A DNA stretch of 64,000 nt from Lytechinus pictus (GCF_037042905.1 NC_087247.1:59520001-59584000), one strand, 5' to 3'. Shown: positions 22,937-59,806, counted from the first letter of the stretch. Numbers and translations are program-made. Notes: generated from the letters alone by a model not told the origin.

Positions 22937-25900
22937 ATGGGGAACCCTCTTCAGCTCTTCACTATCACAGGCCTGTTTTATCTGCCCTTTTTCCTACTTG
23001 GAGTACTAAGGGGCATTCTTGTTCTTCTGCTGTCCCTGGTCTTCAAAGGACCACGATGGGTGTTTCATCGAAAGACCAGGAACTCACGACCACCTTGCAT
23101 GGAGGACTTGCAGCTTGGCTCCCATAAATTTGTTACTGTGGAGGTAGGACAACTGTAAGGTATTGATGTGCTATTCAATGCAATTCAATACTCACTGTTT
23201 GTACTATTCAATAGAAAAAATACAGCTCTCTCTCTCTCTCTCCTCATCCCTCTGCTTGGTTTGCAGTCTGATTTGCTATACTATGATATTGTACATTCAT
23301 CTGTGTCATTTCCACAATCATGTCTAGTCTTCAAACATATACTCTTTTGACAATGCACATTCATATTGTAGAGATTACAAAACACTACCTTCTTTTTAAT
23401 GGATTGAATCAAAGAAAGCTGAATTAAGTATTCTTCCACTGTTTTAATACCAAATATGCACACCAAGTACCTTCTCCCAGTTCAAAGAAAATATTTTATC
23501 CTTCTAGCAAGCTCTTGCAGTTTTATCCCTCTTCAGTTCTTGACTTTTACTTTTTATTCTGGGTACTCTTGGTACCTTTCTCTTGATTCTTCACTCTTAA
23601 CATGTTTTACAGGGTCAGGCTTTCTGGCTTTTCTTGCCAAGTTATCCTACTCATATATCTATATCTGATCCAAACAGTAGTATGAAAGACCATAAATAAT
23701 TTAATCTTTTAACCTATAAGAAGAAATTTCACCTTCCTACTTGAGAATATGCATTTCAAATTTCATTGCAAGAAATATGTCTCTTACCATTGCTATTTTA
23801 CTTTCTACCTTACAATTCACCTTTTTTATTTGTATTCCTTCTACTTTAGGATGTAAAGCTTCATATTGTAGAGTCGGGTGATCCTAAGAATCCTTTGATG
23901 TTATTTCTACATGGCTTTCCAGAATGCTGGTATTCATGGAGACATCAGATCAGAACATTCAATAAAGATTATCAGTAAGTATGACCTCATTCAAACAAAG
24001 TAACCAAATAAGGAAACATTTCCAAAACATATTTCATTTACATGTATCAAAATAATGCAAATGAAATAAAAGAAATATGGAGAGCCCTTGATAGTAATAC
24101 AATATGTAGTTGCTAAAACCTCATCATGATATGAATAAAACAATACACATTTTAGTCTATCTCTGAAGGCAAGTCCATGCTATTATGACACAACCTCTTA
24201 TTCAACATTCATAACTTTATGACACAACCTCTTATTCAACATTCATAACTTTTGTCTTCCCTTTCATTGATTTATCTTTATGCAGTGTTCTACAACCTCA
24301 TTAAACAATCATAATTTTGTACAAATGTTTGGTTTAAAATAAGTGATGCAGTTAATCTACATTTCTAACATTGTAAGCTTTTCTTATAAAAGCTTTATGA
24401 TGTCTTGTGCAGTCTGCTTCATCCTTACACATTTACTCTTGTTTTTAAAATGCAACTTTTCTTTTAGTTAAGTCATCATCACTCAACTTGGACCATCAAA
24501 ATTATGTGTTAAACAAATAACCTCCTTTGATAAATTCATTAGTCTGTCCAACATTTTTTCAACTGGTTTGCTACTTTAGTTGTGTATCATTTGACATGAG
24601 AGGAACTGGTGAGTCAGATGCCCCACTATCCAAGAAGTTCTACAGTCTAGATAAACTCACTGGTAATTATAATTACTATTCTTAGGTATTAATCTCATTG
24701 TCGGAGTTTTGCGTTTTGGCTATACAGGCAGTCAAGAAAAGGGCAACATATTAAAGATGCTGTGAAGTTCTCACTGAAATTAATAATAAATGAAATAAGA
24801 GACCTACTACTAGAGACTATCCTTAATAGCCAATATTAGCTACAAAATCCCTTTGCCCAAAGAGATAGTATGAAACCCTGTTGGACCAGAGATGATTTCC
24901 CTTGAGTACATGGAGATCTTTAGACTATATTGTACCATTCAGAACTGTTGTTTCAAATTTACAATTGAGCACTAAATTATATACCGGTGTGTTGGCTCCG
25001 TTGGTAGAGCGTCTGTCTCACAACTGGGAGGTCGGGGGTTCAAACCCCGGCCGCGGCAGACCAAAAGATGTTAAAAGATGGGAGTTGCTGCTACCCTGTT
25101 TGGCGTTCAACGATTAAAAGGGATAGAGCCTCGTCGATCTGGTGCTGCACAGCGGCTGCCGGGCCCATGATCAATTGGGCAAAGCAAATTTTTGGAGTAT
25201 TTCATTTCATGTCTATTTCGAACAATAAAATATGGATTTTCATATTCATATGTGGAAGGACCCAGATCATCTTGAACACATATCATTCAATGATTAATTT
25301 TAGATCAGTATTCCTACCACTAAAACATTGGGGGTTTTAGAATATTCTCTAAACCAAGTGACACAAACAATGATCTCAGTATATTTCTAAATACATTCTC
25401 AGACTAAACAAGTATTAGATTTGAGAAGAAATTATAGCTGACAGTTGGTTAAAAGCCAACACATAATGTATTTAACTGATATAATAATATATTCACTTGA
25501 ATAAATCACCTATATTTCTTCCTTTCTTTTCACAGAAGACATTCATAAGCTGATTGGTGTATTGGGTCATGATTCCTGTATCCTGGTAGGGCATGACTGG
25601 GGTGGTATGATCGCCTGGGACTTTGCTACCCGTTACCCAGAACAGCTGAACAAACTAATCATTATAAATGCAGCTCATCCCAATAGATTCAGAGAACTCT
25701 TTCAAAGCTACTACTTACCTCAGCTGTGGCGCTCATGGTAATTTTATACCATATATTCTTTTTCACTTCTTTTCTACTGAAATGTAGGCAAGTGTTTCTG
25801 TATCCTTCACTCATCAAGTTTGAACAGTGAAAGATGAAAAGTTTTGTAGTAAACCAATTGTTATCAGGAATTCTGGGATTCTATGACAATACTCAGAAAT

Positions 25901-27809
25901 CTCCTCAAGCTTGCATGGATTAAACAATGACAGGCACTCTCCTATCTCTCTTTCTTTTGAGCAATTTAATAGCATCAAAATGCTGAGGATGATCCTTTAT
26001 AGTATATGTATAATATAGCTTTAATTCAGCTCTCTTATTTAGCTCCCATGAAAACTTGACTTGCAATTAAAGTTTAAAAATACAAGCAACAAACAAAATA
26101 TATCAGGGAAGGAAATTAACAGGTTTTTGAACATTTTTTTCTTCTTTCAGGTATGTGTTTTTCTTTCAACTGCCATACTTGCCAGAGATGTTGCTGTCAA
26201 TGGGTGATTATATAATACTCCAGAAACATTGCATGAAGGGCCCAACAACTGAGGAAGATATAGAAGCCTTCAAATTTGCTCTTTCAAGACCAGGCAAGAA
26301 ATATTATGTAACTTATTTTTTCCCTTTAACTTATTTGATATATCTACTGGGAAGATATATGAAGAAATTTCTTTTCCATTTTCAAGAGCTCTTCAAAGCC
26401 TGCTTTACATGTGATCAGATTTGACTTCCCGTTCTTCTGTATTTTAAGCCCTACATGTATATCTAAATAATCCACACTGTACTGCACTCAGCTCAGGTGA
26501 GGTAAATTATCATCCAAAGTCTCTTTGGAAGTGCTTATAGATGTATGGTATATATCGTTGATGGTCATCTGAACCGTCGTATCACACATAAGACGGTGCA
26601 AACCCATTTCAGAGAAAATTGACTTCAAAGTTCACTATAATTTTCACACTCAGTTCCCAAGCCTTACATCATATTCATTGCAAGAAAAATACATGGTTGG
26701 AAAGACCAAGACAATTGCTTGACATTGATATCTTTATTTCTATACAAAACCAAGGATCAGAGAAGGTATCGCAAAAGCAAAAGAGATACAATTGTAATTT
26801 TGGTTTGAGTGGTTTAGATTTTTCTTGTACAAAAACGCCATAGGCGATACAACAACCCTGACTGCGATTTAAATGCATGCGGCCAGTCAAAACATATCGC
26901 TTTTTCACGGGCAAAGACAATGCAGTGCCCATACGACGGTTTGGCGGACCGCGCATTTGCATATTGAGTGCGTACAGTTGTTGTTTGCTTTGCTACAGTA
27001 CACGTTTCCAACGGGATTTGCGCATTTTATAAACAATTTTCCTGGCATTGCCATGGAAAACCCCTCATATCTCAGAAACTAAAATAAATTGCTGCCTAGA
27101 AATTTAGTTATGAACAGAATAGCCTGAATAGGACTTGTACATTTCATTTTCTGCAAAAATCTAAAAATCAACTTTTCGACCAAAATTAACTGATATGACG
27201 GTTTGGATAAACGCCGACGATATACACTACAGAAGAACTGAATATCATAGTGTAGTAGGTTTCACGGTACACCATGTATCTTTCTTGGGCAAGTGTTGGT
27301 CCTGAAAGGACCACCCAATCTCGACGTTTCGACAAGTGTGTTCTGAGGATGACAAGAACACACTTGTCGAAACGTCGAGATTGGGTGGTCCTTTTCAGGA
27401 CCAACACTTGCCCAAGAAAGATACATGGTGTACCGTGAAACCTACTACACTATTCTTCTTCGCCATGGAAACCTTCAGAAGTTATAACGGAATATCATCA
27501 TTATATGAATGAGACTGCCCATTTTAATTGTGAAGCCTTGTTTTTTTCACTACAGGGAGAGTGACTACATTTCTAAACTACTACAGGAATGCAGCACATG
27601 AATTTTTCCATGGAACAGGTTATGTCACCACACCTACTCTTCTCATCTGGGCCACGTCACACTATGCTCTTGACAACAAGCTGGTGGATAAAACAGAAAG
27701 ACTTTGTCGTCAATTAATTGTAGAAAGAATAGAAAATGGTGATGTGCTGGTGCACCAGGAACAGCCTGACATTGTCAACAGACTCATCAAAAAATATCTT
27801 GTAGAGTAA
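22937..27809 (+). CDS. Epoxide hydrolase 3/4-like alpha/beta hydrolase, copy 1 (337 aa; altered catalytic triad)
   Basis: Exons 22937-23143, 23850-23974, 24580-24662, 25536-25737, 26151-26293 (GC donor), 27556-27809 = 1014 nt with an open frame. N-terminal hydrophobic anchor, [15 protein letters not shown], DMRGxGES, GHDWGG, SWY and NYYRN are present. C-terminus reads WATSH and ENGDVLVHQ instead of WGTGD and EGGxH. Confidence 0.9.
24984..25250 (+). mobile_element. tRNA-derived SINE (family B), more complete copy
   Basis: A box TGGCTCCGTTGGTAGAGCG, B box GGTTCAAACC. Homologous to 8705-8950. Confidence 0.8.
26551..27224. mobile_element. Older TA-flanked MITE in EPHX copy 1 intron 5
   Basis: Imperfect ~34-bp IR: TATATCGTTGATGGTCATCTGAACCGTCGTATCA versus the reverse complement of the right end, TATATCGTCGGCGTTTATCCAAACCGTCATATCA. 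Confidence 0.5.
27249..27489 (+). mobile_element. Penelope-like element remnant: inverted plus direct pseudo-LTR hairpin with a hammerhead-type core
   Basis: ~98-bp near-perfect inverted arms (27247-27344 / 27355-27453). CTGAGGAT-GACAAG-AACACA-CTTGTC-GAAACGTC core at 27343-27376. Flanking 9-bp direct repeat GAATATCAT (27240-27248 / 27490-27498). Confidence 0.65.
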
Positions 27810-29548
27810 TTTTTTTTACTATGCTTTCCTGTAAATAGCTTGTAAGCGAAGTTTAGTACAATTTCCTCATTAATAATCTAGTCAATGTTTTCTTTTATTT
27901 CTTTGAAATATTTCTCTTTAGTTTTGCATATTAGCAATATACAATAATGAATAATCTTTGTTGGTGAATCATTAAATACTATTATCATCTATGTAGAGCG
28001 TTTTAGCGTATTTTGGTCTGCATCAATTGCCCGTGGAGTATCAGAGCATATCCCTAAAAAGGACCAAAATCCGACGAATATTCCACAGGCTCCTGTACAA
28101 AGCTTGCCGTTGAATATGAGACCGTATTCGACAGTCTACTGCGCATGCCCGAATGCATGAAATATACAACGCGTACAACAATGAAACCAATGCAATGCAT
28201 AGAGCACAATGACACTCACTGATGTCATAATGAACTATACGTATAAAGTCGCATGACGACAACATTTATCCTACTGAAGTGATGATGCCATAATGTGATA
28301 AGTGATATGACTTGTTCAACCAAAATTCTCTCTCTTTTTTTTGTTTCAATGAAACAGTCCTGACAACCCTTGTACATTTGGAGAAAATTCTAGGTCATTT
28401 TAAAACTACTTATCCTACTTCCCTAATTTATATATATTGCCATCATATATCATACTAAAAGTGAATGCTGTGAGGAAGAGACAGAGAGAGAAAAAAAACA
28501 TCTGCATGTGTTTAAAAATTGCAAGATTCTAATGACTGAATAAAGATCAAACAATATTATCAGTTTAAATAAATGATAACTTGAACAGCTAGAAGCAAAA
28601 TTGAACTTTGTACAGTACTCTTTAATTTGACCAGTGTTTGTTAGATATAACAGGAGTATGAGAAATAATGACTGCACATATACCCTTTAATAGTATCATA
28701 TCTACATGTAGATAAGGTTGTACAGTATCAATATCACAAGTCTTTCCTATATTTAATAGATAGTTAATACAGAAATATAATCTGTTTAGTGTTTGTACTC
28801 CACAGAGTGACATAGTGATTTTACAGGCTACATTGTTTATTGTATTTATAGTCACAAGGATTCTAAGCACAGGTCAGTTTTAACGTGGTTATTTTTATTT
28901 GTTATTTATAGAAAGTACTCAACTCATTTCATCATAGCATGAAATCATGGTGAAATCAAACTGAGATCTCTCTAGAATACATAAAGACCCACATGGGCAT
29001 ATTAAAACAAAAAGTTAGAAGGAACAAAAAAATGAATGAAGATATGAAGTACTACATGTACATGTAGTCTAGTATTAAAATGCCAGAGTTTTATAAATAA
29101 TTGCATTTTTGTTTCTAAACACTGTATGGAAAATTGCTAACTATCTTCTCTTTGAATATGGCAATTACATTTTTTAAGAACAACCATATAATGCTTGTTA
29201 CGTGCTATACGAAAGAAAGACTGAAAAGACAAGCTTGCATTGAAAATGAGAAAGATCGTTCATCCTTGTTTTTTAAATAACTTAATTTTTCATGGCTTAA
29301 CTTCTCACAAATTGTTTTCCAAAAAAATTCTTTGAAAAAATATTGTCCAGCAAGAGGAAAAGTTTTTTTTTTTTTTAAAACCTGACAATTTTATCACCCA
29401 GAATGAATATTGCTATATATACACTGTACTAAGTACTATCAATTATCTATATGAGATTAATTTTGAATCACTTTCATGCAGATTTCCCTTTTGCAATCGC
29501 TATGGTTTGATGAATTTGCCATCTAGACTCCTAAACGTTAGTGTGAGA

Positions 29549-32500
29549 ATGAGCATTTTGAAATATAGCTGTGTGAGGACCTTGTACTACCTACCAATGT
29601 ACATCTTGGTCATTCCTGTGGTAATATTCATTGTCCTGAAAGGATTGTTACGTCATGGACCATGCTGGCTGTTTTATAAGAAAGAAAGATTAGAGAGACC
29701 AGCTTGCATGGATGATCCACAGCTTGGAAACCATAAGTTTGTCCAAGTCAAGGCAAGTGTCCATTAAAGTTTTATTAGCTCTATATTTCAAAATTATTAT
29801 CATTATATTTTTTGGGGGGAGGGGCTACTTTTCTTCTGCAACATTGGATATGCTTTAATCTTAACATAGCAGTAAATCAGGATTTTCTGGGACTTTTTTT
29901 ATGTCTGAGGGCTCTTTTGAGCATTTCAGGGGCAAATGGCCCAGAGCCTCCAAGTAATTATTTCCCTGCAAGCAAGATATCGTAACCAGAAGAAACGAGG
30001 GGCAAATCGCCCTGAGCCTCCAAGTAATTATTTCCCTGCAAGGTATCGTAACCACAAGAAATGAAGGGGCAAATCGCCCTGAGCCTCCAAGTAATTATTT
30101 CCCTGCAAGCAAGGTATCGTAACCAGAAGAAATGAAGGGGCAAATCGCCCTGAGCCTCCAAGTAATTATTTCCCTGCAAGCAAGGTATCGTAACCAGAAG
30201 AAATGAAGATGACGGGTGTAGGGGCAAATTTGCTGGTTGTTAGGCCAACTTAAGTATTTCACTTAAATAATCATTCATGACTAGTGTCTTTATCACCGAA
30301 ACAGTTTTAAAGAAAGGTCAGAAAACTTAAAATTCCCTGGTCACAGAAATACAACATTAGCACGTGATTGAATGTTTCCTAGGTCTCAAGTAATCCTGAG
30401 CTACAAATTCTACAAGTTTAAACATTTAACAAAAAACATAAAGACACTGATGCATATGGAGGCTACAAAGTGTCTTTTTGGTGTTTATAATCCTATGTGA
30501 CAGCAATTACTTCACAACTTGTTAGGAGAGCTCTCACTGTTCTGTGTACCCTGCTATGTACCTCTTGACTGAAAATGATACGTCACTATAATTTGCAATT
30601 TCACTTGCATAAAACTTAACTTCATAAGATGACTTGAATACTGGAATACATATGGAGTCTTTAAATTATAGCGTTTATTCCAATAATATTTAATTCTTCT
30701 ACTTTAGGACATAAAGCTTCATATTGTAGAGTCAGGTGATCCTAAGAATCCTTTGATGTTATTTCTACATGGCTTTCCAGAATGCTGGTATTCATGGAGA
30801 CATCAGATCAGAACATTCAATAAAGATTATCAGTAAGTATAACCATGCATGATATAACTGTGCCTGAAACACAATCAGAAAGACAAAAAACTTCTTAGGT
30901 TCACCAAGATATCTGAAAGTCAATCCAAAATCTGATCCAAAGAAATACTCCAAAAATGCCGAACAAATCTGACATATAATTAATAAAATGCTGAAGGCAA
31001 TATGAATTATAAACATTAATTCTTATGAAGGTTAAACATTGCAAACACAATGATATTGACAGCCTTCTTTTTTCTTGAAAATCAATTGAAAAATATCCAG
31101 TATCTACTTTTCTGTGAACAAACAATACAAACCATTGACATGCTTGCAATCTCTACTTAGCTGTGTAGCCATTGATATGAGAGGTGTTGGTGAATCAGAT
31201 GGTCCTCCAGGAAAGATGAACTATACTTGTGACCTTATCACAGGTGAGCTACAACCTTTGTTTCATACATGTATATCATATCCACTTGTTCTGTATCACT
31301 TGTTTGTAATTTTGCGTAATTTTTGACCTATTTTCAAATTTACAGAGGTAACATCCTTAAAAACTCTATTTTATTTGTAGAAAACAATGTTTTTATAAGT
31401 AGAAACAATTTTTTATGATAATAGCCAATTGAAAGAAAATGATCCATCCTCATTCATAAACTTAAATTAGGACCTACTCTTAAAATATTCCCAATCATTA
31501 ATTGATAAACTGAAGAAGATAATAATAATTGGCATTTATATAGCGCTTTATCAATCTACGACTGTTCAAAGCGCTTCACAATTATTATTACCCGGTCACT
31601 GGATTCATAGCATTTCAAGCAGCCTGTTAGGCGCACACTTGCTAAACCAACCACAATGACGGTTGTTTCCTACCGGAACCCAATTAGCACCTGGGTGAGA
31701 GTGGCAAAGTGTGGATTGACGCCTTGCCAAAGGGCGCTAGGCCATGGTGGGATTCGAACACACGACCCTCTGATTACAAGACGAGAGTCAGAACCGCTAC
31801 ACCACGGTGATTCCACAAGATCCATTCTAAGTATGAATATACCTCTAATACCCTCTTCACACTGGTTTTAAAATTTATCCTGGTGCTGTTGAGGGAGGGC
31901 GGCACCGCTATAAACCCGCTATAAATGCATTCAGAGTAGAAAAGTTATCCAGGCACAGTCCTGAGATAAATTTCATGTATCCGTTCACACTGCAGCAGGT
32001 GATTTTTTATGACCTTGGTAACAAAACACGTGTAGGCTTGTGACCCAGTGAGTGACCTGACTTTGATACACCGGAAATATTTGAGGGTGGGGAATGGAAC
32101 CCACGTCCTTCATATTGAAAGACGAGAGTCATGACCACTAAACCACGATGCCCCCACATTATAGTAAAGATATCACAAGTGGTTTATCCCGGAGTTGTAG
32201 CGGTGTGCCTTCACACTGAATGAACACCGCGACAGTCGCAGGGCTGTCCCCGCTGCTATTACTATGGCTTGCGAATAGCGATAGTTTGTTGCAGAGTTAT
32301 AGGGAGGCGAGGTTATCCCGGGGTAGTTTATTGCAGGTCCGAGAATTCACACTGAAGGCAACACTGCTACAGTCTCAGGACAGTCTCGGTACTGAAGCTG
32401 TGATTGAGGCCGTGTGAAGACTGTATACTATAAAAGAGCAAATTGTCCTTGTAACTTCTGAAGGTTTCATGGTGAAGAAGAAGAGTGTATTGACTTTACG

Positions 32501-35338
32501 GTACACCATGTATCTTTTGTGGATATATATATAGGCCACGAAAGATACACCACTACAATTAGTTCATGAGTTAACATTTTTGTGAAAACAGATAATTATC
32601 CTTTTATTTCTCAAATACAGGAGATGTGTGTGAACTGATCCATGTTCTAGGACATGAGACATGTATCTTGATAGGACATGACTGGGGTGGATTGATAGGA
32701 TGGAAGTTTGCTGCACAGTATCCTGAAATGGTGGATAAATATATAGCAATGAATATACCACACCCTGATAGATTCAATGAGCTTGTATCATTATACTTGC
32801 CACAAATAATCAAGTCATGGTGAGCAACAGCTAAGACAATTAAAATTCTATATGCAATAGGTAGCTCCCCCCATCTTAGCCTAAAATTCAATTAAGTAAT
32901 CTAGTACCAAGGTAATTATAATGAAGATGATAATGATGACAATCTTTTAAAGATAAAACAGCCATCCAAAATCAATTTAGGCTTTGGTGTAATGTATGTG
33001 CTTTAATGTGGTCACTGTCAAATGTTCAACTAGAGAAGCATTATTCCCGACCTTTCGTTGGAGAACGCGAACGTTTATTTACGACAGTAGTTGATTTTGG
33101 AAGAGACTTTTGGGCCTGTCGTCATGGTCGTAAAACTCTGTCCTGCAATGCAAATTGTGTGACATGAGATTTTTTTTTGTTTCGCATCTGCAACGGAAAC
33201 ATTCAATATGCGTTTCGTGTGCAAAATTCTGGTTGCTACTATGGTAACAGCGATATATCCGATTTAGGACGACTTTCCAGAGCCACATTTTGTTCCTCCC
33301 AGAGCTCGAGAGGCCGCCCGGGGGGCCCACTTCCATTGACGAGTGGATACCAGGCGCGACCACGCGTAAAAGGGGACAGAGTGGGCAAGTAGGTTACGTA
33401 TATAGGCCTTTGTAATGTTATAAGGGTGTCAAAAACGATGTTTAAAATACTGAAAAAAGTGATATATTTCCAATACTTGTAGGGTTTCACAAGCCAAATA
33501 CTTAAGAGATGCATTTTCATAATCTGGAAAAGCCTTGCTTCCCTTGTTTAGGGTGCTTTTTGAAACCGCATGGTCGTGCCTGGTATCCACTCATCAATGG
33601 AAGTGGTCCCCCCGGGAATTTGAATCTAATCCCCCATTTCTGGGGAAAGTAGAACATGATGCACATTACATTGTGTGCTAGAGGCATATCGTTTGTGTAG
33701 AAGGAGTAAACAAAAGAAAAAAAAACGCAATTTCGGCTGGTATTCAGACGTATACATGCTGTGTAGATATCAACGCATGCAAAATGGTTTCTGCTGGAGA
33801 GGTCATCTGACCCATGGAATCAATTGCCAGTGATCCACCAATAATCCACATTAAATACAATATTGATTCGATGGACTGTAATGATCTATATCTAAGCCTT
33901 AATTCAGTAAGTTTTTCCTCACTCAATATGTACTCGATTTGTTTGAAAAACCACTTTCTTATCCATGTCATAATCTATTGTGGGCCCTGCATTTCGATAT
34001 CTCCAGCCAGCTGTCATAGCTAGTAGAGGTTCGCCGCCGGCTCAAGGGGCATATACGATGATGACCAGACGTACACATGCATGAAAACGGGTGTCGCGTG
34101 AAAGAAATTTGCACACGAATAGCAGATCTACAAAGCAATGAATGTAGAACAGATTTGTACGATTGATTCTATTGATTATAATGTACAATTACTCGTTAAA
34201 ATCGAATGTACGATTAATCGTTGATTTTTTGTGTTAGGGGACCCTAATCTTACCGTCCATGAGGTTTGCGAGAGGTGGCTATTTCCATTCTGAAGAGGTA
34301 CAATAATATAGCCAATGATCCATATGAAATACTGTAGTGATACTTTTCACTAGGCCTATAAATAATTGATCCACCGTATAATGGATAAATCTTTTCTGTT
34401 TGAAACTGTTTGACAGGTACATATTTTTCTTCCAAATGCCATGGTTCCCTGAAAGGGGAGTACAGATGGGAGATTACAACATGATCAATGAAGAATGTAA
34501 ACATGGCGAAACTACTGATGAAGATATTGAAGCATTCAAGTATTCTATATCAAGACCAGGTAATCACATTTTTCCTGGGTGACTTGGTATTGTAAAGTCA
34601 GAATGAGCAGTTTAGATATTATGTGCGAGTGATTCGGTGGTGTGGGTTTGTTTGGTGGTGTGCAGTATCTATATGAGTAAATTGACACAATAGACATCAA
34701 ATTGGACTGATATTCCACATATCATTGATTAACAAATAACAAGTATCTAGTTACTTTCTAGCAGACTGATTAAATCCTGATCATATCAATTATTAATTTA
34801 TTAGAGTCAAGAAATTCAAAGAACAAAGAAAGCAAAACAAAAACTAGAAAAGCCATATTCTTTAATTTCCCTTAAAAATAAAATATGACAAATAGAAAAT
34901 GAAGATTGCATTTTTTTAAATGAAAATTCAACATAGTTTTCATTTGAAAAATTCACCTATGGTAGAAGACGTACTGCTGTACCAAAGAAACTTATAAATA
35001 AACTTTTTAAAAGTCTATACTACAGCTGAACTGTACATGATTGATACTGATCTGATTTTCTTATAGATCGTCTGCATACCTTCATGAACTACTACCGTAA
35101 TGAACTTACTCTGATCTTCACCAAAACTGGAGTGGTTAAGACACCAACTCTGCTCATTTGGGGGACAGGAGATGATTACCTTCACACCCGTCTTTCTTAT
35201 GACACTGAGAAATTCTGCCCAAATCTGAAGGTGGAGCGTATAGAGGGCGGCAATCACTTCATCCAACAGGAGCAGCCGGATCTTGTCAATCAGCTGATGA
35301 AAAAATATTTGGAGAAAGAAATTACTCTTGAAATATGA
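29549..35338 (+). CDS. Epoxide hydrolase 3/4-like alpha/beta hydrolase, copy 2 (341 aa)
   Basis: Exons 29549-29752 (GC donor; an in-frame upstream ATG at 29510 is possible), 30708-30832, 31161-31243, 32621-32819, 34417-34559, 35067-35338 = 1026 nt. HGFP, GHDWGG, NYYRN, WGTGD and EGGNH are all intact. Confidence 0.9.
29929..30227. repeat. Minisatellite, ~70-bp unit, about 4 copies, in EPHX copy 2 intron 1
   Basis: Unit GGGGCAAATCGCCCTGAGCCTCCAAGTAATTATTTCCCTGCAAGCAAGGTATCGTAACCAGAAGAAATGAA, starting at about 29929, 29999, 30066 and 30137. Confidence 0.95.
31519..31816 (-). mobile_element. tRNA-derived SINE (family A relative)
   Basis: Minus-strand A box GTGGTGTAGCGG, B box GTTCGAATCCC, CCAGGTG..AATTGGGTTCCGGTAGGAA core, TTA tail. 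Similar to 6318-6599. Confidence 0.75.
32452..32550 (-). mobile_element. Short diverged second copy of the Penelope-like 3' end
   Basis: Reverse complement ATACATGGTGTACCGT...TTCTTCTTCACCATGAAACCTTCAGAAGTTA matches 27421-27484. Confidence 0.6.
33317..33616. mobile_element. 300-bp MITE with CCCGGG termini
   Basis: ~46-bp IR CCCGGGGGGCCCACTTCCATTGACGAGTGGATACCAGGCGCGACCA / TGGTCGTGCCTGGTATCCACTCATCAATGGAAGTGGTCCCCCCGGG. No clear TSD. Confidence 0.75.
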
Positions 35339-37779
35339 AGCAACATTTCAGAGTTTTTAAAGTTGCTTTTAACTATTGTTTCGTTATTAGGTTATATTGA
35401 CACAGTACATAGCTCATAGTGATGAATGTTTGAATGATAAAATATGCACATTTTACAATCATACTTACTTCAATCATTGATAATTTGAGAGTTTTGATTA
35501 CTTAGTGTCTTCTTTGCTATTCTCATGTATAAACTGCTTGTAACATCCATTTCTGTTTAATTCAATTATATACTTTTTTTTTTCAATATCACATAATCTG
35601 TGCTGTATCTTAATTATCCATGTACATATTGATATTGAAATGTAAACAAAATGACTTCCTATTTTTAATGATGGACAAGAAATAAATACATAAACTTATA
35701 TACAAATTCAAAAATTGATACAATTTTCATGGGGGAAAAAGTACCGGAGAATGCATTATAGTTTTTTTCCCGTTTTATCAGGCTTTTGTAATAAACCTGA
35801 GAATGTTGTACTTTAGTGTATTTTCCCCTTAATGTTCAAGACCTAAGATTATATTAATGATCCATGAATGCAGATATACAATGAAATTTAGCATCCAATG
35901 GCTTTCAAATATATATTTTTTTTAATGTGGAAAATTCAAAATACATGTGATAACAAAACTTTTTAAAAAATTCAAATAATTCAATTATGGTCAATTTCTT
36001 TGGAATAATCTCAAACCTGTCTTTAAAATTCTAGTTACATACTCTATATTTAAACACAAATTGAAACTTCTATCCTAAACATATACCTGAATAATAATCC
36101 CTCGGCTCCCTAGTGTTCTTCAAAAGCATCATCAGTTCACCCTAATTTTTTCTTTCTTTTTAAGTATATCTCTTTCTATTTTTTGTTTATATATATTTTA
36201 ACAAATTGACAATACCTATAATTTATTCAGAGGGAATCTTCAAATTATAAGCTCTGCCTTTAGTTTACCTTTCATGCATGTTCTCATCTTCATGTCTATA
36301 TCCAATGTGCAATTCCATACAAGTACGTTTTAACAGTCTTATTTCTACTGAAATATTGTAATGCACTATTTTATCATTAACATTTTTTTCTTGTTGAATG
36401 ATATATTGTAATATACTTTGTTAGATATGAAAATAAACCAAACTGAAACTGAGTGAATTTTTGTAATAACTGTACCCCTTCAAATTAATGTCAAAAGTAC
36501 GTGGATCATATTTGCATCTAAATTTACTTGCATTTGTTTATACATGCTCTATTCATTTTCCAAGCTACATCAATACCTCATATCATAACAAGATGAAATA
36601 TTGTATAAGCTTCTGACATTGAAGTAGAACATTCAACTTAAGAATGGGATTTCATATTTTCTTTCTAAGTAGCTATAGAAGTATTCAAATACCATGCAAG
36701 AACACTCTCTTGAAGATCTAATCATTTAGATGTACAGAACCTTCATCCTCAAATGCTTTTGCTTGAAAGAAAAATAATATCGTACCAGTAGACATTGAAC
36801 TTCACGTGAGCACCCCATAATTCCATAAATTGGTATTTTCTCAAAGATTCACCAACATATTCTTGTTTTTTAAGATCAACTTATCATCTGGGTAAACTTC
36901 CTTTCACTATAAAAATAATTCAGAATCCTTCTGGATCAATTACTGCAAAAAGGGTAATGGTACTTGTAAGACTGGGGAAGACACGCATGCTGAGTACCTA
37001 GGGAGCTCTTTGAAAGAAAAAAAAAAACCCACATCATTGGTGAGGCGACTTGCTATTCAAAGAATGGACTTTGATCAAAGAAGTGTGTACAGTCCCGATA
37101 TCTAGATCCCGATCCCAATTATGGAGGTGGATTCTTTCTTCTCGCTGAAATATGATTTATGAAATCTCTTTCATTTTGGAGGAGGTATTCTTCAGATGAG
37201 GTATGAAGCTTTTTGTCTGATTTAATAATCATAAACTAGAGAAACATTTTACAAAATTACTTAGGAAATCTTTTGAAGACTCTTTAAGGAAAGGAAATAC
37301 GAATTAGGAGGAAAATGAGGAGGGGGGGGGGGGGGAGAAGGAGATCGATTGATGAGAGAAGAAGAGAGAGGAGGGGAGGGGAGAAGGAGGGGGATTGAGA
37401 GGAGAAAAAGAAAATAAAGAAAAGGATGTAGAAAAAATAAGAACAAGAAGATAGCTGAAAAAATAAGATTTTAAAGTCCACATTTCTAAATTCTAATCTG
37501 AATAAAACATTAAACACTAGTAGGTATTGTTTAAATAAGGAACTTCCATGGCATGCATATATTGACACAACCTCTAACAGAAAGGTATATTTCTTTGTAT
37601 TGACGATCAAGTGAATGCCATTCATATAGCACATGTTCACTGAGGTAGTCAGACACCCACCCATTCAGAAAGACATGCATTCAGGACCTCTATTTCTTGC
37701 ACATCATATATAGTACTGTAGCTATACTGCAAAGGTGATCTTATTTTCAACAATAATATCATTTTGTAAAGCTTCGATC

Positions 37780-40700
37780 ATGAGTCTAAGGACTCTCCTG
37801 AGCTATCCCATCATCAGATATATCCTGTTGCTTCCATTGTTCATCTTAACAACGCTAATTGGTATCTTATTTCTCCTTGGTGCGCTGATCTTCAAGGGAC
37901 CATCATGGGTATTCAGGAAGAAGAAAACTGGCTATGTTAGACCAGAGTGCCTTGATGAACCAAGTCTTGGTACTCACAAAGTCATCTCTCTTAAGGTAAA
38001 ACAAGTATATTTTGCTTATATTAAGACCCATAGTTATGCAGATTATGATGATAGATAGGTTTGTCAGTTTCATAATAACGGTAAGGTTTAAAAATGGTCA
38101 ACACTATATTTTGGATAAACTATGCTCTTTATGTTGTATCAAGTGAGTGATGATAGTGGTAGAATTCTGTAATTCCTGATTGGAAACATTTTATACAGAA
38201 CACATTATTTTCTTTGAATGAGCCTGGATAATTCACTCTTGTAACACGTTGAATTCAGATTACATGATTGTTAGCCAAGAAAAAAGAATGAGATAGATAT
38301 TATTATGGCAGCATAGATATTCTTGAATTATCAAATCATTATCATTTCATCTATGTATACATGACCAAAATTCAGGGGAAAATACTGCAAGTTGGTTTGA
38401 GTGATTTTATGATTGAGACAACAGTACCACCCTTTAGAATGATGGCATATCCTTTTTAAACATCTTGGCCCGTATTCTGAAGTCAGGTTTAACTTAGACT
38501 CAGGTTTAAAGTTGTGTTTTAAGTATGGGAAGCCAAAAGTATCAAATTTTTTATTAAGTTGTACGTTTCTTATGTTTACTGTGCTCTTTCCTGATTCATC
38601 GATGGTGAAGACAATAATCTATATACACTTCCTAGACAATTATGAATGATTTGAGAGCCAAATGAGCTAAAATATGATATCTCTACCGTTAGTGATTTAT
38701 GTAACAATTGGCTGTCCATACTTAAACCACAACTTTAAACCTGAGTTTAAGTAAAACCCGACTTCAGAATACGGGCCCATATGTACATGTATGAAGTATG
38801 GTTCTGAACAAATCCCTTACAATGTACAAGTAAACATGTATGGTATTGTAAGCCATTCAGGCTTTCAGATGTTTAAAACCAGTTACCATGGGGATGAATG
38901 GTTGTAATGTCATGCTTCTTTGATATATTGCTTTAAAGGGTTGCTGCCCAGATATTATGTTAGCCTTCACCTTCCTACATCAACACTATGCTTCACGTCA
39001 CAAATAATTAATTTGGGTATCTAATTTACAAATTAAAGTGGATGCAAAGTCATGAAAAATCAGATCTTTTATACTCCCAGCAGCTTAATTAAGTTTCATG
39101 GTTGTGCAGTCCATTCTAGTTTCCTAATAATCATTTGATGTTAATAGGTATATGTATATCCCTGAACATAGAACATCCAATCAGAGCATTTGATAAAGGG
39201 GGTAAAGGTCATCCTGACAATTTGCTCCATTCAGTAAAAGCTGAAAAATATTGAGAAATGATAATTAAGGCTTGATGAAAATCCATCAAAGAATAAGACA
39301 GTCGAGTCTTTTAATTTTGATTTTGTTCTGTCATATTTAAGCAGCTATCCCATAAGTAATATAATTCTATAAATTCACATTTTTATTGATTCATGAATTC
39401 TTAAATGTCTCTATCCCAGAAACCTCTGAAATGATGTATCTGATGATACAAATTGAATGCACAGGTAATATAATTTCTTATTTTTTATATCACATGCAGA
39501 TTTTCACCAAACCTACATCTATGATTTCTTTTGCTTTTTTTCAAAACAAATTTGTTATCAGGGTGAACCAACTCTTCAATAATTTTTTTTTTTTATTCGT
39601 ATTCCTTCTACTTTAGGACATAAAGCTTCATATTGTAGAGTCAGGTGATCCTAAGAATCCTTTGATGTTATTTCTACATGGCTTTCCAGAATGCTGGTAT
39701 TCATGGAGACATCAGATCAGAACATTCAATAAAGATTATCAGTAAGTATATCCTCATTATCAAAATGCCTAGGTATTGACAACGTGGTAATGCCCTTCAA
39801 TGAAAAAAATAAAAATGAACCAAACTATTTCTGTATGTATACTTATATTAATGGAACTAACTCCCCTAAACTTCTTTGAAAATTTCTGCAGTCTCAATGA
39901 ACCTTTATTACTTTAAACCTGAACATTGCATATGTGGAACATTAGGGCTACATATCATGCAAATACAAAGCGATGATAAGCTGATTAATAATTCTGATAC
40001 TGTATTCATGTATTGTAATAGAACACAATGGACCAATGTGAAATGCAAATAAATATCTTAATTTTCTAATAGAAAATATAACAACTTTGCCTGGGCTTTG
40101 TTTTTTTTTACTTTACAGCTGTGTTGCATTTGATATGAGAGGAGTTGGTGAGAGCGATGGCCCAGATGGAGTGTCTAATTACACCATGGATAAACTTGTT
40201 GGTACGAAGCACACACAAAAAGTGAAACAGAAATTATGTAACCAACTGTCAAACTATGCGAATATTACTGTAGAAGCTGTTATTTTTGGCAAGGGTTTTA
40301 TTTTCACGGATAAACAGCCGCGAACTCAACAATGTGCAAAAATATTGACAAACTTAGTTATCAGTGCCAATGTCCCCAACAGCAAAGCTTTGCTATTGAA
40401 AACATGATGTGTCAGTGTTTCCACAGGTCAAAAAGAAATTTCCGAAACTGAATCCCAAAGTTCCCTAAATTCATCTCCTGCATCTTTCAAGTTTGATATT
40501 TAACAAAATTCAGACAAAATACAGGGAGCCTAAAATTGGTCCAAGAGACCAAACTCAAAGAATTTAGCCTTTTTTGTTCGCACCCTTTCAAAACATATGA
40601 ACAAAATTACGAAATCTGAGTCCGCGCAGAAAATTTTGAGCTACTTATGAGGCAAACAATTCTTTAAATATAACATGAATATTGAAAGTTGCTAAATTTA

Positions 40701-43199
40701 ATTGTTGATTAACTACGATTTTCAGATTTCCCGAAATTTCTTCATTTCCTGAAGATTACCTGAAAATGATCAAAAGAATTCTGGAAATTTCCTTCAAAGT
40801 AGAAACACTGTGCTGTGTAATGAAAAAGTTGAAATATCCACCTATATTTAAAAAATAAGGTTGAAAATACAGTTAGTAATTCAAAACTTGCTAGAATTTC
40901 ACTAACAAAATCAGAGCCTAAATTACTTCCTGGCATATTTTCATCCACTTACTGTAATATTACAATGTATTTTGCATGAACTACATGTAATTTCATTTCA
41001 TTGTCATCTGATTGACTCTATGTACACAGGTACATTGGCAGCTATTTGCATACTTATTAATATTCATAAGTCACATGACCAGAGGTTTTAGAGGTGTAAG
41101 ATTCTGTTCACAAAATTCTACATTTTTTATGCCAATGCAATCCAACCAACAAACATGTACACTTTATAAGCATCTGAAAGAAATATTAATGTACATGTAA
41201 ACAAAAACCACCAATTAGAATCTTTAGTCAACTTGATATAATTTTTTTTTCTTTGAAGGTGACGTACATGACATGATCAAAACATTAGGACACAAGTCAT
41301 GTGTTTTAGTAGGACATGACTGGGGTGGTTTAATAGGATGGGAGTTTGCAGCTCGGTATCCAGATATGGTGGATAATTACATCCCAATGAATGTACCTCA
41401 TCCAGATAGATTTGCTGATTTCATCACCAGCTCTGTTGTCCAGATAATGTTGTCATGGTAAGATCAGGAGTTTTCCTCTTCAAGATTAAATAATTATTTT
41501 TGAGGAGATAGCAAACTAAAATTGAAAATCGTCATTTGGAAAAAGATCACTGTCTTTAGACTTTATTTTATGATCTTCTTCCAATTCTATTCAAGGGAAA
41601 GTAATTCTACAAATTAGAAGGCTTTAGTAATGATCAGCACTCATAGTTGCTCCCAAATTTATAATGTAATACTACACTAAATATTCTATGTTCCTGATAC
41701 ATACATGTAAGTGTTTCATGTACATGTATCTATATAGTACTTATCTAGTCTTAAAAGAATTTTACAGGAAAGGTCATTTTAAGTTATTCCTATTTGAAAA
41801 AAAAAATTATGAGATTTAAATTGTTAAAATACAAATCTCCAATATTTACTTTCAACCTTTTTTAATTTGTGCTTTTTATAAAATATTTTTCCTCATGGAA
41901 CATAACTATGTAGTTTCAATTTGTTCACATAAATGTGGAAATTTTGGATCACTAGAAAATAAAAAACAATTTCAAATTTTGCGAAGAGAGCACACAAAAA
42001 CACTTCCAACAGATATCAATTGAAATAAAATCATTATATCATATATATTATCTCTAAAACAAAAACACTTAATATTTCTTGGACAATTTCCTGCACTTTT
42101 TGTCTTTCTTTTGATTGAAAAACTTTGAAAACAATATACCGGTATATATATATATATATATGTATATATCCTACGAAAGGGCGAAGTCTATGAATGGGTT
42201 TATTCTGTCATAATACATATTTAGACGTAAAGACGAAGGTAGAGGGCGTTAAGGCGCATTACGAACATTGAAAGAAGACAAAAAAATTCGCCTTAAACAC
42301 AGATGTAAAGAAATATATATATATATATATTTATATATATTTATATATGTCATGAATTTATGTTTACCTAAGTTGTTGTTTACCTAAGTTGTAGTTTATC
42401 AATGATATTACAATTTTTTTAAATATTCTATCCCACCCTAGGTACATGCTGTTTTTCCAGTTGCCTTATCTACCAGAAATCCTAATGTCCATGGGGGACT
42501 ATGGCATGCTGAAAGAAGCATATAAGATTGGTCCAAATACAGACGAAGATGCTGAAGCCTTTAAGTATTCCATCTCTATGCCAGGTAATATCAATTCTGA
42601 TTGATTTGGGTTCATAATTTCATATCTATAAAAATTTCAAATCTCAGCGATAGAATTGCATTGACTTAAGTGGCTATACCGTCTGATTCTGGAGTGACAG
42701 TCGCTGGGAGTCTGAAAATACAAGATAATTTCAAATTGAATTTGGTTGATTAGAGATGTCATCCCCATGTACTCAACATGACTGTATGCAATGTGGAATA
42801 TAATTACCACTTATAAATAAGAAGTCACTTTCTTAGATTTAGTTCCTACGTAGACCTATGAAACTGATTATCTTGCCATGAATATCTGATTATGTTCAAT
42901 ACTTACAAATTTTGTAGACCTATATCTTGTTTTTCTTTAAAGGTCGGTCAACCACCTTTGTCAACTACTATCGGAACATCATCGGGGCTATCTTTAACCA
43001 GCCATGTGGGAAAGTTTCTGTGCCAACTTTGTTGATTTGGGGAACAGGAGATGCAGCATTTAATATCAAGCTTTCACATGACACTGAGAAGTACTGTCCC
43101 AAGATCATTGTTAAGAGGATAGAAGGTGGTCATCATAGCATTCAACAAGAACAACCAGATGTAGTTAATAATTTCTTGAAACAATACTTGAATAATTGA
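37780..43199 (+). CDS. Epoxide hydrolase 3/4-like alpha/beta hydrolase, copy 3 (340 aa)
   Basis: Exons 37780-37995, 39617-39741, 40119-40201, 41259-41457, 42442-42584, 42943-43199 = 1023 nt, with the same intron phases as copies 1 and 2. HGFP, GHDWGG, NYYRN, WGTGD and EGGHH are intact. Confidence 0.9.
38467..38777. mobile_element. MITE with GGCCC ends (Harbinger-like)
   Basis: ~50-bp IR GGCCCGTATTCTGAAGTC..GTTT.ACTT..ACTCAGGTTTAAAGTTGTG, mirrored at 38728-38777. Confidence 0.8.
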
Positions 43200-59113: not shown

Positions 59114-59256
59114 NNNNNNNNNNNNNNNNNNNNNNNNNNNNNNNNNNNNNNNNNNNNNNNNNNNNNNNNNNNNNNNNNNNNNNNNNNNNNNNNNNNNNNN
59201 NNNNNNNNNNNNNNNNNNNNNNNNNNNNNNNNNNNNNNNNNNNNNNNNNNNNNNNN
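59114..59256. other. Assembly gap (143 N)
   Basis: Run of N. Confidence 1.
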
Positions 59257-59806
59257 ATGAAGAATAGAAGGTCAACTTCTTATGCTTCAACTATTCCTGT
59301 GCTCTTAAAATTCACAAAAGATAACGTCACACATCTGTTATTAAAATCAATGTCATGCACCAACTAAAATTTTCAGTTTCCAATATTGATCATAATATCG
59401 TGATTAGCTCTATATATTTTTTCTTGATCACCACCCTTGTCATTACTGCTATTCAGATGATCTTCTAGCTCATTGAAATTACAGATCCCTGTGTTTGTTG
59501 GAAAATATTGACAAGATCCAAAAACAATGACAAAAATAAAAGCAAATTAGGCCTAGCTCTTTGTTATATTCAACCTTCACTATTATCTACTGTTGTTTTA
59601 ACATCTAAAAGTCAACTATATAACCAGACTGTAATAGAACGGGATTCTTTTAATTTTCTGAATAAAGCTATGCTCCTATAACAAAGAACAAAATTGGAGT
59701 GCGTAAATAAGAGATGTGATGAACATTGCATTAAGGCTTGATGACTTATGTATCATGTATGCGCCTACATAATGTCTCCAAATTCAAATCTTGATTACTT
59801 GGTAAT

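What the first reader, a model, noticed from the sequence alone, without database searches (positions are those of the whole stretch)
23832..39750. One exon homogenised across three otherwise deeply diverged epoxide hydrolase paralogs
Seen: exon 2 (125 nt; [41 protein letters not shown]) is 125/125 identical between copy 2 (30708-30832) and copy 3 (39617-39741). It is 122/125 identical to copy 1 (23850-23974; GAT GTA vs GAC ATA, TCG vs TCA). The identity extends only ~12-20 nt into the acceptor (CTTCTACTTTAG) and ~8 nt into the donor (GTAAGTAT), then stops. The adjacent exon 3 differs at 33 of 83 nt between copies 2 and 3 by my count, mostly saturated third positions, and the other exons are visibly similarly diverged. 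Protein-level constraint cannot preserve every synonymous site. Inference: recurrent exon-limited gene conversion keeps the oxyanion-hole (HGFP) module uniform while cap and active-site exons diversify. A nucleotide-level function (RNA structure, small-RNA target) is the alternative explanation.
Basis: partly seen in the sequence, partly recalled or inferred. Interest (0 to 1): 0.8.

Follow-up and report, generated by a model that had tools for sequence, protein, structure and literature searches.

The report
One exon kept identical by gene conversion
Three old, otherwise very different neighbouring epoxide-hydrolase-like genes of a sea urchin share one 125-base exon that is kept almost letter-identical by repeated copying of about 150 bases of DNA from one gene to another; this is a clean but not new kind of gene conversion.

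Summary
Exon 2 (125 nt) is 125/125 identical between copies 2 and 3 and differs at 3 sites in copy 1. The rest of the three six-exon genes is 50-56% identical in protein, with saturated synonymous sites (pS 0.73-0.81).

The window is Lytechinus pictus, chromosome-scale contig C3.
- Outside exon 2 the genes group by paralog (support 100/100/100).
- Exon 2 groups by genus (97/97). It has 8 sites fixed across all paralogs within a genus and different between genera, and no paralog-diagnostic site. The other exons have 0 and 123 such sites.
- Between genera, exon-2 synonymous sites differ as much as those of other exons (pS 0.46-0.65 against 0.43-0.50). This excludes a nucleotide-level constraint.
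- Three independent assemblies show the pattern, which excludes an assembly artefact.
- Identity runs 9-33 nt into both introns, so the template is DNA, not cDNA.

Verdict: recurrent, short-tract interlocus gene conversion confined to exon 2, independently in both lineages. This is a new member of a known kind (compare TLR1/TLR6, BMP8A/B). The core peptide is invariant even in relatives that are not converted. Conversion is therefore probably a consequence of that conservation, not what keeps the module uniform.

The parts
22937..27809 (+). Gene c1, an EPHX3/4-like alpha/beta-hydrolase of 337 aa. Exons: 22937-23143, 23850-23974, 24580-24662, 25536-25737, 26151-26293, 27556-27809.
   Evidence: Gene model. 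94% identical to L. variegatus P0154 and 78% to S. purpuratus P0157. Intron 5 has a GC donor.
29549..35338 (+). Gene c2, 341 aa. Exons: 29549-29752, 30708-30832, 31161-31243, 32621-32819, 34417-34559, 35067-35338.
   Evidence: Gene model. 97.7% identical to L. variegatus P0276 over 257 aa. Intron 1 has a GC donor.
37780..43199 (+). Gene c3, 340 aa. Exons: 37780-37995, 39617-39741, 40119-40201, 41259-41457, 42442-42584, 42943-43199.
   Evidence: The model is 100% identical to the NCBI L. pictus protein P0272. Exon-length contigs with no differences occur in run X1, and RNA reads of organism B cover all six exons. Best PDB match is the epoxide hydrolase 5ng7, E 2.5e-54.
23822..23991 (+). Converted segment in c1: exon 2 plus about 28 nt of intron 1 and about 17 nt of intron 2.
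   Evidence: Repeat family D6: 96% identical to 39589-39758. Flank comparison.
30696..30841 (+). Converted segment in c2: 12 nt of the acceptor, exon 2 and 9 nt of the donor. It is 146/146 identical to c3.
   Evidence: The last 12 nt of the intron read cttctactttag, as in c1 and c3. The L. variegatus c2 ortholog has cttttaatgtag there, although its flanks further out are orthologous to those of L. pictus c2.
39589..39758 (+). Converted segment in c3. It is a mosaic: the intron flanks are c1-like, while the first exon codons (GAC ATA) and the rest of the exon are identical to c2.

Best explanation
Three tandem, same-strand EPHX3/4-like alpha/beta-hydrolase genes of Lytechinus pictus arose by duplications that predate the Lytechinus-Strongylocentrotus split. 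They have diverged to saturation everywhere except exon 2. That exon is homogenised again and again by short-tract interlocus (non-allelic) gene conversion. In this process a break in or near exon 2 of one copy is repaired from a misaligned neighbouring copy as a DNA template, and about 130-180 bp is transferred without crossover.

What is shown:
- The pattern of concerted evolution.
- Its recurrence in at least two lineages.
- The neutral rate of exon 2 between species.
- The spill-over of identity into both introns.

What is inferred:
- The tract is confined because only exon 2 still offers enough uninterrupted identity to start and sustain heteroduplex formation. It encodes the most conserved peptide of the family, about 20 invariant residues around HGFP. 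Each conversion renews that identity. The flanking introns and other exons are too diverged, or conversions reaching them are selected against.
For: (1) Within-genome identity of synonymous sites. Exon-2 pS is 0-0.09 among the L. pictus copies, against 0.73-0.81 in the other exons.

(2) Orthologous arrays exist in L. variegatus (L007/L009: c1, c2) and S. purpuratus (L008, L011: c1, c2, c3a, c3b).

(3) Trees. The rest of the CDS gives c1, c2 and c3 clades at 100/100, 100/100 and 100/99. Exon 2 puts all five Lytechinus copies together at 97/97. On exon 2 the AU test rejects the c1 ortholog clade (p 0.0066) and the c2 clade (p 0.00098). On the rest it rejects the species clades (p about 1e-44).

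(4) Diagnostic sites. Exon 2 has 8 genus-diagnostic and 0 paralog-diagnostic sites. Exons 1, 4, 5 and 6 have 0 and 123 (Fisher p 6e-13).

(5) Neutral rate between genera. Exon-2 pS is 0.46-0.65 for any Lytechinus-Sp pair, against 0.43-0.50 for orthologs in the other exons.

(6) Recurrence.
- A derived GCA>ACA (Ala>Thr) change is present in all three L. pictus copies and in no other.
- A derived ATC>ATT change is present in both L. variegatus copies only.
- In S. purpuratus, c1 is 7/125 from c3a and from c3b, and c2 is 10-14/125 from the others. The events therefore have different ages, and one pair is not adjacent.
- The c3 flank in L. pictus is a mosaic.

(7) The template is DNA. Identity extends 9-33 nt into both introns. 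The acceptor of L. pictus c2 was overwritten relative to its L. variegatus ortholog.

(8) Permutation test for the longest identical fragment: 0 of 10,000 for all five paralog pairs tested.
Against: - No conversion event was observed directly; everything is inferred from the comparative pattern.
- Exon 2 has only about 23 synonymous sites, so each pS value has a standard error near 0.1. The tree inside the Lytechinus clade is unresolved.
- The c3 ortholog of L. variegatus was not recovered from the assembly. Its existence rests on coded runs of 'organism B'.
- There is no GC-biased-conversion signature. Exon-2 GC3 is 0.27-0.44, below the 0.41-0.50 of the rest.
- Why the tract stops at the exon borders (lack of homology or selection) is not resolved.
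Confidence: 0.9

Rival explanations
1. Nucleotide-level function. Exon 2 carries an RNA structure, a small-RNA target or a similar element, and purifying selection on the RNA or DNA sequence itself preserves every site in all copies.
For: Synonymous sites are identical within a genome. Even the unlinked paralog c0 is 78-81% identical in exon 2, against about 58% elsewhere.
Against: Between genera, exon-2 synonymous sites diverge at the normal rate: pS 0.46-0.65 against 0.43-0.50 elsewhere. 16-19 of 125 sites differ between Lytechinus and S. purpuratus. The fold energy is ordinary, z -0.34, with 69 of 200 shuffles folding at least as well. There is no Rfam family in 22000-44000. Sequence constraint would not produce species-specific states shared by all paralogs.
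Confidence: 0.03
2. Assembly or polishing artefact. The three exon-2 copies really differ, and consensus polishing with multi-mapping reads made them look the same.
For: A stretch of about 150 nt repeated three times within 16 kb is the kind of place where short-read polishing can copy the majority letter. The three-site difference between c1 and c2/c3 is small.
Against: The same exon-limited homogeneity appears in two other, independently produced assemblies: L. variegatus GCA_018143015.1 and S. purpuratus GCA_000002235.4. Cross-mapping of reads already needs near-identity, so polishing could only explain the last few percent, not 97-100% against about 60%. In run X1, contigs from another organism-A data set show no other letters in exon 2. 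Their word depth there is about 5-8 times that of the c3-specific exons, as expected if several transcripts share the exon.
Confidence: 0.02
3. Gene conversion occurs, but it is kept by selection for homogeneity. The copies would need identical exon-2 surfaces, for instance for a shared partner or hetero-oligomerisation. This is the argument made for TLR1/TLR6.
For: The pattern has persisted in two lineages since before their split. Published cases invoke such selection (PMC2077338, PMC2720389).
Against: The core peptide is invariant also in c0 and in Diadema, which are not homogenised with the array at the nucleotide level. Protein-level purifying selection is therefore enough. The probable pseudogene Sp_c3a still takes part: its exon 2 is 7/125 from Sp_c1. 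No interaction was tested.
Confidence: 0.1
4. Homogenisation by unequal crossing-over, or conversion through a spliced cDNA intermediate.
For: Both processes are known causes of concerted evolution in tandem families (established knowledge).
Against: Unequal crossing-over would homogenise whole repeat units, but introns and the other exons are saturated. A cDNA template could not carry intron sequence, yet identity covers 9-33 nt of both introns.
Confidence: 0.01

Closest known systems
TLR1/TLR6 region-limited gene conversion in mammals (Kruithof et al. 2007, PMC2077338)
   Same: The genes are tandem paralogs. One defined segment is more alike between paralogs than between orthologs, through independent conversion events in each species. 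The remainder of the genes diverges by paralog.
   Different: There the segment is about 300 codons within one large exon and the paralogs are moderately diverged. Here the tract is about 130-180 bp, coincides with one small exon, involves three or four copies, and lies in genes whose other synonymous sites are saturated.
BMP8A/B, DDX19A/B and TUBG1/2: concerted evolution lasting over 100 My (Carson and Scherer 2009, PMC2720389)
   Same: Specific segments of old duplicates are homogenised over a long time in several lineages. The detection criterion is the same: paralogs are more similar than orthologs, and non-coding sequence is included.
   Different: Those cases are gene pairs with long homogenised stretches that include whole introns. 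Here only 9-33 nt of each adjacent intron is included and the array has more than two members.
Short-tract non-crossover (ectopic) gene conversion between dispersed or tandem duplicates in general
   Same: The tract length of about 150 bp, the dependence on local identity and the mosaic boundaries fit the usual picture. This comparison rests on established knowledge and was not tested here.
   Different: No de novo event, hotspot motif or GC bias was seen here. Exon-2 GC3 is lower than in the rest of the genes.
EPHX3/EPHX4-type (ABHD9/ABHD7-like) membrane-anchored epoxide hydrolases
   Same: Public annotation names the relatives 'epoxide hydrolase 4-like', '3-like' or '1-like'. The proteins match Pfam PF00561. 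They carry the HGFP motif, the GHDWGG nucleophile elbow and a hydrophobic N-terminus. PDB matches are to epoxide hydrolases, down to E 2.5e-54.
   Different: No activity is known for these sea-urchin proteins. c1 and its orthologs lack the usual Asp and His positions of the charge relay.

Membership tests
Concerted evolution by interlocus gene conversion | In the segment, paralogs within a genome are more alike than orthologs between species | tested here: met
   Exon-2 differences: 0-3 within L. pictus, 5 within L. variegatus and 4-14 within S. purpuratus, against 16-19 between the genera for any pair, orthologs included. The Lytechinus clade has 97/97 support. AU rejects the c1 clade (p 0.0066) and the c2 clade (p 0.00098).
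Concerted evolution by interlocus gene conversion | Sequence outside the segment keeps the orthologous (by-paralog) history | tested here: met
   The rest of the CDS gives c1, c2 and c3 clades at 100/100, 100/100 and 100/99, and species clades are rejected at p about 1e-44. There are 123 paralog-diagnostic and 0 genus-diagnostic sites. The intron flanks of L. pictus and L. variegatus align by ortholog.
Concerted evolution by interlocus gene conversion | Silent and non-coding sites are homogenised, not only amino acids | tested here: met
   pS is 0-0.09 in exon 2 against 0.73-0.81 elsewhere. Identity runs 9-33 nt into both introns.
Concerted evolution by interlocus gene conversion | The identical fragment is longer than chance allows (GENECONV-type test) | tested here: met
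   Longest identical runs of 131, 102, 101, 79 and 45 sites. 0 of 10,000 permutations reached them in any of the five paralog pairs.
Concerted evolution by interlocus gene conversion | The segment evolves at the neutral rate between species, so similarity is not due to constraint on the nucleotides | tested here: met
   Exon-2 pS between genera is 0.46-0.65, against 0.43-0.50 for orthologs in the other exons. Between L. pictus and L. variegatus it is 0.09 against 0.05-0.10.
Concerted evolution by interlocus gene conversion | Direct observation of conversion events or of polymorphisms shared among paralogs | not testable with these tools
   Only one hint: exon-2 site 27 is G in Lp_c1 and Lv_c2 and A in the other Lytechinus copies. 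Pedigree or population long reads would be needed.
Alpha/beta-hydrolase-fold epoxide hydrolase (EPHX3/4-like) | Alpha/beta-hydrolase fold domain | tested here: met
   PF00561 scores above its cut-off on the exon 4 and exon 6 peptides. It is precomputed on P0272, P0154 and P0163. PDB epoxide hydrolases match down to E 2.5e-54 over residues 65-338.
Alpha/beta-hydrolase-fold epoxide hydrolase (EPHX3/4-like) | HGXP oxyanion-hole motif and Asp nucleophile in the sm-x-Nu-x-sm-sm elbow | tested here: met
   HGFP lies in exon 2 and GHDWGG in exon 4 of all three copies. Both align with the same motifs of 5ng7.
Alpha/beta-hydrolase-fold epoxide hydrolase (EPHX3/4-like) | His-Asp charge relay at the C-terminal positions | tested here: inconclusive
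   c2 (WGTGD...GGNH) and c3 (WGTGD...GGHH) have it. c1 and its L. variegatus and S. purpuratus orthologs read W(A/S)T(S/A)H...GD(V/M)LVH instead.
Alpha/beta-hydrolase-fold epoxide hydrolase (EPHX3/4-like) | Epoxide-hydrolysing activity | not testable with these tools
The names in the databases are automatic annotation.
Functional RNA element or small-RNA target inside exon 2 | Reduced substitution at silent sites between species, a stable structure, or a match to a known family | tested here: not met
   Neutral pS between genera. Fold z -0.34. No Rfam match.

The most novel reading that the evidence does not exclude
The homogenisation is not merely tolerated but maintained. Either selection for identical exon-2 surfaces in all array members (a shared partner or hetero-oligomerisation), or a sequence-encoded recombination-initiation site inside exon 2, would have kept a conversion island of about 150 bp alive for tens of millions of years in several echinoid lineages. 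The array would then be a natural system for measuring the minimal homology and tract length of ectopic conversion in a deuterostome.
Probability: 0.12. Interest if true: 0.6.

Novelty: new member of a known kind. Interest (0 to 1): 0.4.

Why it matters
This is an unusually clean natural example of micro-tract concerted evolution. One 125-nt exon is homogenised in three or four tandem genes, while everything around it has diverged to saturation. It happens independently in two sea-urchin lineages.

- It shows that a single-exon tree can be positively misleading for orthology in this family.
- It gives tract boundaries that can be mapped to within a few bases against a sister species.
- L. pictus is a laboratory model with short generations, so the array is a tractable locus for measuring ectopic conversion rates and homology thresholds.

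It does not reveal a new mechanism.

Tried and rejected
- The exhaustive representative search with the exon 6 peptide returned only distant cluster representatives (about 40% identity) and one 110-aa fragment. It gave no direct orthologs.
- Spliced proteins have no reference, so I used an alignment of four distant full-length relatives plus the window's exon peptides as the query. That found the urchin orthologs.
- P0169 turned out to be an ortholog of the unlinked paralog c0, not of c2.
- The look-up of encoding contigs had no record for P0271 or P0373. The longest isoform, P0374, worked.
- No c3 ortholog lies within 10 kb downstream of L. variegatus c2. A DUF5641 transposon-like gene is there instead. 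No L. variegatus c3 protein is in the database.
- The Diadema setosum locus holds a single gene inside an intron of a xanthine-dehydrogenase-like gene. It served only as an outgroup.
- The read laying tables of joints and loose ends were swamped by a high-copy repeat at 38466-38777, so no splice-junction counts were obtained. Run X21 has almost no reads on c3.
- NCBIfam gave no hit above its cut-offs, since its models are prokaryotic.
- A GC-biased-conversion signature was looked for and not found.
- The AU test for the c3 clade on exon 2 was uninformative (p 0.34), because Lp_c3 is identical to Lp_c2 and was left free.
- Rejected readings: unequal crossing-over, a cDNA-mediated template, RNA-level constraint and assembly collapse. 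The reasons are given under the rival explanations.
Full report
**What is in the sequence.** The three 125-nt stretches at 23850-23974, 30708-30832 and 39617-39741 are as described. c2 and c3 are identical. c1 differs at three sites. Identity continues for 12 nt upstream and 9 nt downstream between c2 and c3. Between c1 and c3 it continues for about 28-33 nt upstream and 17-20 nt downstream, then stops.

I built complete six-exon models:
- c1: 22937-27809
- c2: 29549-35338
- c3: 37780-43199

All three are on the + strand and have the same intron phases. Two introns are GC-AG. The c3 model equals the NCBI protein P0272 residue for residue.

Outside exon 2 the copies are 50-56% identical in protein and their synonymous sites are saturated (pS 0.73-0.81). 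In exon 2, pS is 0 or 0.088. The longest identical runs (131, 102 and 101 sites) were never reached in 10,000 permutations, whose maximum was 30-37. The window holds no further copy. The genome holds one distant paralog, c0, 33 Mb away on the same contig. Its exon 2 is 81% identical to the array's.

**Which organism.** The window is contig C3 of an 812-Mb genome. C3 is 82,431,108 bases long. That is exactly the contig length recorded for the Lytechinus pictus proteins P0163 and P0272, and P0272 is encoded in the window. The window is therefore L. pictus.

**Related loci.** The following were recovered:
- L. variegatus (L007, L009): c1 (P0154, 94% to L. pictus c1) and c2 (P0276, 98%) in tandem, downstream of an inositol-pentakisphosphate 2-kinase gene. 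A transposon-like gene follows, and no c3 lies within 10 kb.
- S. purpuratus (L008, L011): c1 (P0157, 78%) and c2 downstream of the same kinase gene, then two c3-type copies about 11 kb and 25 kb beyond c2.
- Of the S. purpuratus c3-type copies, c3a looks like a pseudogene. Its exon 3 is 81 nt instead of 83, it has a reverse-transcriptase-like insertion, and its end is shortened.
- Diadema setosum has a single gene in another genomic context. I used it as an outgroup.

The duplications into c1, c2 and c3 therefore predate the Lytechinus-Strongylocentrotus split. From my own knowledge that split is some tens of millions of years old; I did not test this here.

**The decisive comparison.** The table gives pS values for the other exons.

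| Comparison | pS, other exons |
|---|---|
| Orthologs, L. pictus - L. variegatus | 0.05-0.10 |
| Orthologs, Lytechinus - S. purpuratus | 0.43-0.50 |
| Any paralog pair | 0.73-0.87 |

In exon 2, every Lytechinus-S. purpuratus pair gives 0.46-0.65, whether ortholog or paralog. That is the normal between-genus rate. Paralogs within a genome give the following:
- L. pictus: 0-0.09
- L. variegatus: 0.09
- S. purpuratus c1, c3a and c3b: 0.09-0.13
- S. purpuratus c2 against the others: 0.31-0.36

In raw counts, exon 2 differs at 0-6 sites among the five Lytechinus copies and at 4-14 among the four S. purpuratus copies. Between the genera it differs at 16-19.

Eight exon-2 sites are fixed across all paralogs of a genus and differ between genera, and none is paralog-diagnostic. 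In exons 1, 4, 5 and 6 the counts are 0 and 123 (Fisher p 6e-13).

Maximum-likelihood trees agree:
- The rest of the CDS gives c1, c2 and c3 clades at 100/100, 100/100 and 100/99.
- Exon 2 unites all Lytechinus copies at 97/97.
- The AU test rejects the c1 (p 0.0066) and c2 (p 0.00098) ortholog clades on exon 2.
- It rejects the species clades on the rest (p about 1e-44).

**Recurrence and tract anatomy.**
- A derived GCA>ACA (Ala>Thr) change is present in all three L. pictus copies and in no other sequence.
- A derived ATC>ATT change is present in both L. variegatus copies only.
- Homogenisation therefore went on in each species after they separated.
- The flanks of L. pictus c2 are orthologous to those of L. 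variegatus c2. The exception is the last approximately 12 nt of intron 1, which in L. pictus read like c1 and c3 (cttctactttag against cttttaatgtag). L. pictus c2 was thus a recipient, and its tract started inside the intron.
- c3 is a mosaic. Its intron flanks are c1-like, while its first codons are c2-like. This needs at least two events.
- In S. purpuratus the closest exon-2 pairs include c1 and c3a/c3b, which are not neighbours. The probable pseudogene c3a takes part.
- Because intron sequence is included, the template is genomic DNA, not spliced cDNA.
- Because the introns beyond the 9-33 nt next to exon 2, and the other exons, are untouched, unequal crossing-over is excluded.

**Alternatives.**
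- A nucleotide-level function is contradicted by the neutral between-genus rate, an ordinary folding energy (z -0.34) and no Rfam match.
- An assembly artefact is contradicted by three independent assemblies showing the same thing, with species-specific shared states.
- The artefact reading is further weakened by contigs of run X1, another L. pictus-like data set. They carry exon 2 without any other letter. Their word depth of about 111 compares with 14-24 on the c3-specific exons, as expected if several transcripts share the exon.

**Expression.**
- Contigs of run X1 end at the exon 1 boundary, or cover exon 4 with 82 extra letters upstream. This is consistent with spliced c3 mRNA.
- RNA reads of the coded 'organism B' cover all six c3 exons at about 93-95% identity. 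A close relative of L. pictus therefore also has an expressed c3.
- From the share of words held (0.22) and the divergence, organism B is probably L. variegatus. This was not verified.
- In the organism B RNA run X24, all reads at the start of exon 2 read GAT GTA. In the DNA contigs of run X3, about two thirds of the word depth reads GAT GTA. This hints that its c3 carries the c1-type start (weak evidence).

**How it most likely works.** Exon 2 encodes the first strands and the HGFP oxyanion loop. Its core, [13 protein letters not shown](Y/F)SWRHQI, is invariant even in c0 and in Diadema. Neither is homogenised with the array: 26-29 and 31-39 of 125 sites differ, respectively.

- Protein-level selection therefore suffices to keep the module uniform.
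- It also makes exon 2 the slowest-diverging stretch, and so the only place where misaligned neighbours still find enough identity for strand invasion.
- Each short non-crossover repair renews that identity, and the island perpetuates itself. Everything else has passed the point of no return or is protected by selection against chimeras.
- These steps are inference. The comparative pattern is what is shown.
- No GC-biased signature accompanies the pattern.

**Comparison with what is known.** The phenomenon is of the same kind as the region-limited conversion of TLR1/TLR6 (PMC2077338). It is also of the kind of the long-lasting segmental homogenisation of BMP8A/B, DDX19A/B and TUBG1/2 (PMC2720389). 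No paper in the library joins epoxide hydrolase, sea urchin and gene conversion on this subject. This case has three distinguishing features:
- The tract is short and coincides with one exon.
- The array has three or four members.
- The surrounding sequence is extremely diverged.

It is a new member of a known kind.

**Gene family.** By homology the genes are EPHX3/4-like alpha/beta-hydrolases. Their activity is untested. c1 has an atypical charge-relay region that its orthologs share.

**Verdict.** Interest is moderate.

Noticed in passing
window 27556-27809 (c1 exon 6); L007 15308-15561; L008 15325-15581: c1 reads WATSHYAL...[11 protein letters not shown] where c2 and c3 have the usual WGTGD...GG(N/H)H charge-relay residues. 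The c1 orthologs of L. variegatus and S. purpuratus share the odd arrangement, so it is old and conserved rather than a recent defect.
   Followed up: partly
window 38466-38777 (c3 intron 1): A repeat of about 310 nt with very high copy number. Word depth in contigs of both organisms is 10^4-10^5 times that of single-copy sequence, and it is abundant in RNA reads. It swamped the joint and loose-end tables of read laying.
   Followed up: no
L011 1823-9391 (S. purpuratus c3a): A probable pseudogene copy of c3. Exon 3 is 81 nt instead of 83 (frameshift), a reverse-transcriptase-like ORF lies between exons 4 and 5, and the C-terminus is shortened. Its exon 2 is intact and only 7/125 from S. purpuratus c1. 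The database protein P0274 (c3-like with a PF00078 domain) looks like a gene model that reads through this insertion.
   Followed up: partly
window 29753 and 26294: Two GC-AG introns: the donor of c2 intron 1 (AAG|gcaagt) and the donor of c1 intron 5 (CAG|gcaaga). The other copies have GT at these positions.
   Followed up: no
window 29928-30210 (c2 intron 1): Four tandem copies of a unit of about 70 nt, 91-93% alike.
   Followed up: no
window 23876, 30734, 39643; L007 11462, 19298: Exon-2 site 27 (TCG/TCA) is G in L. pictus c1 and L. variegatus c2, but A in L. variegatus c1 and L. pictus c2 and c3. It may be a variant moved between paralogs by conversion.
   Followed up: no
L009 17470-22860 (L. 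variegatus, downstream of c2): A gene for an 819-aa DUF5641 (transposon-type) product lies where L. pictus has c3. c3 was not found within 10 kb, although RNA and DNA of a close relative (coded organism B) match the c3 exons.
   Followed up: partly
window 61372-62139: A tandem array with a period of 41 nt (also 62 and 227), rich in GGCGCCGAT motifs. Elsewhere, at 57189-63066, there are dispersed copies of a unit of about 45 nt that starts ATGCGAGCGCGAAGCGCGAGCT.
   Followed up: no
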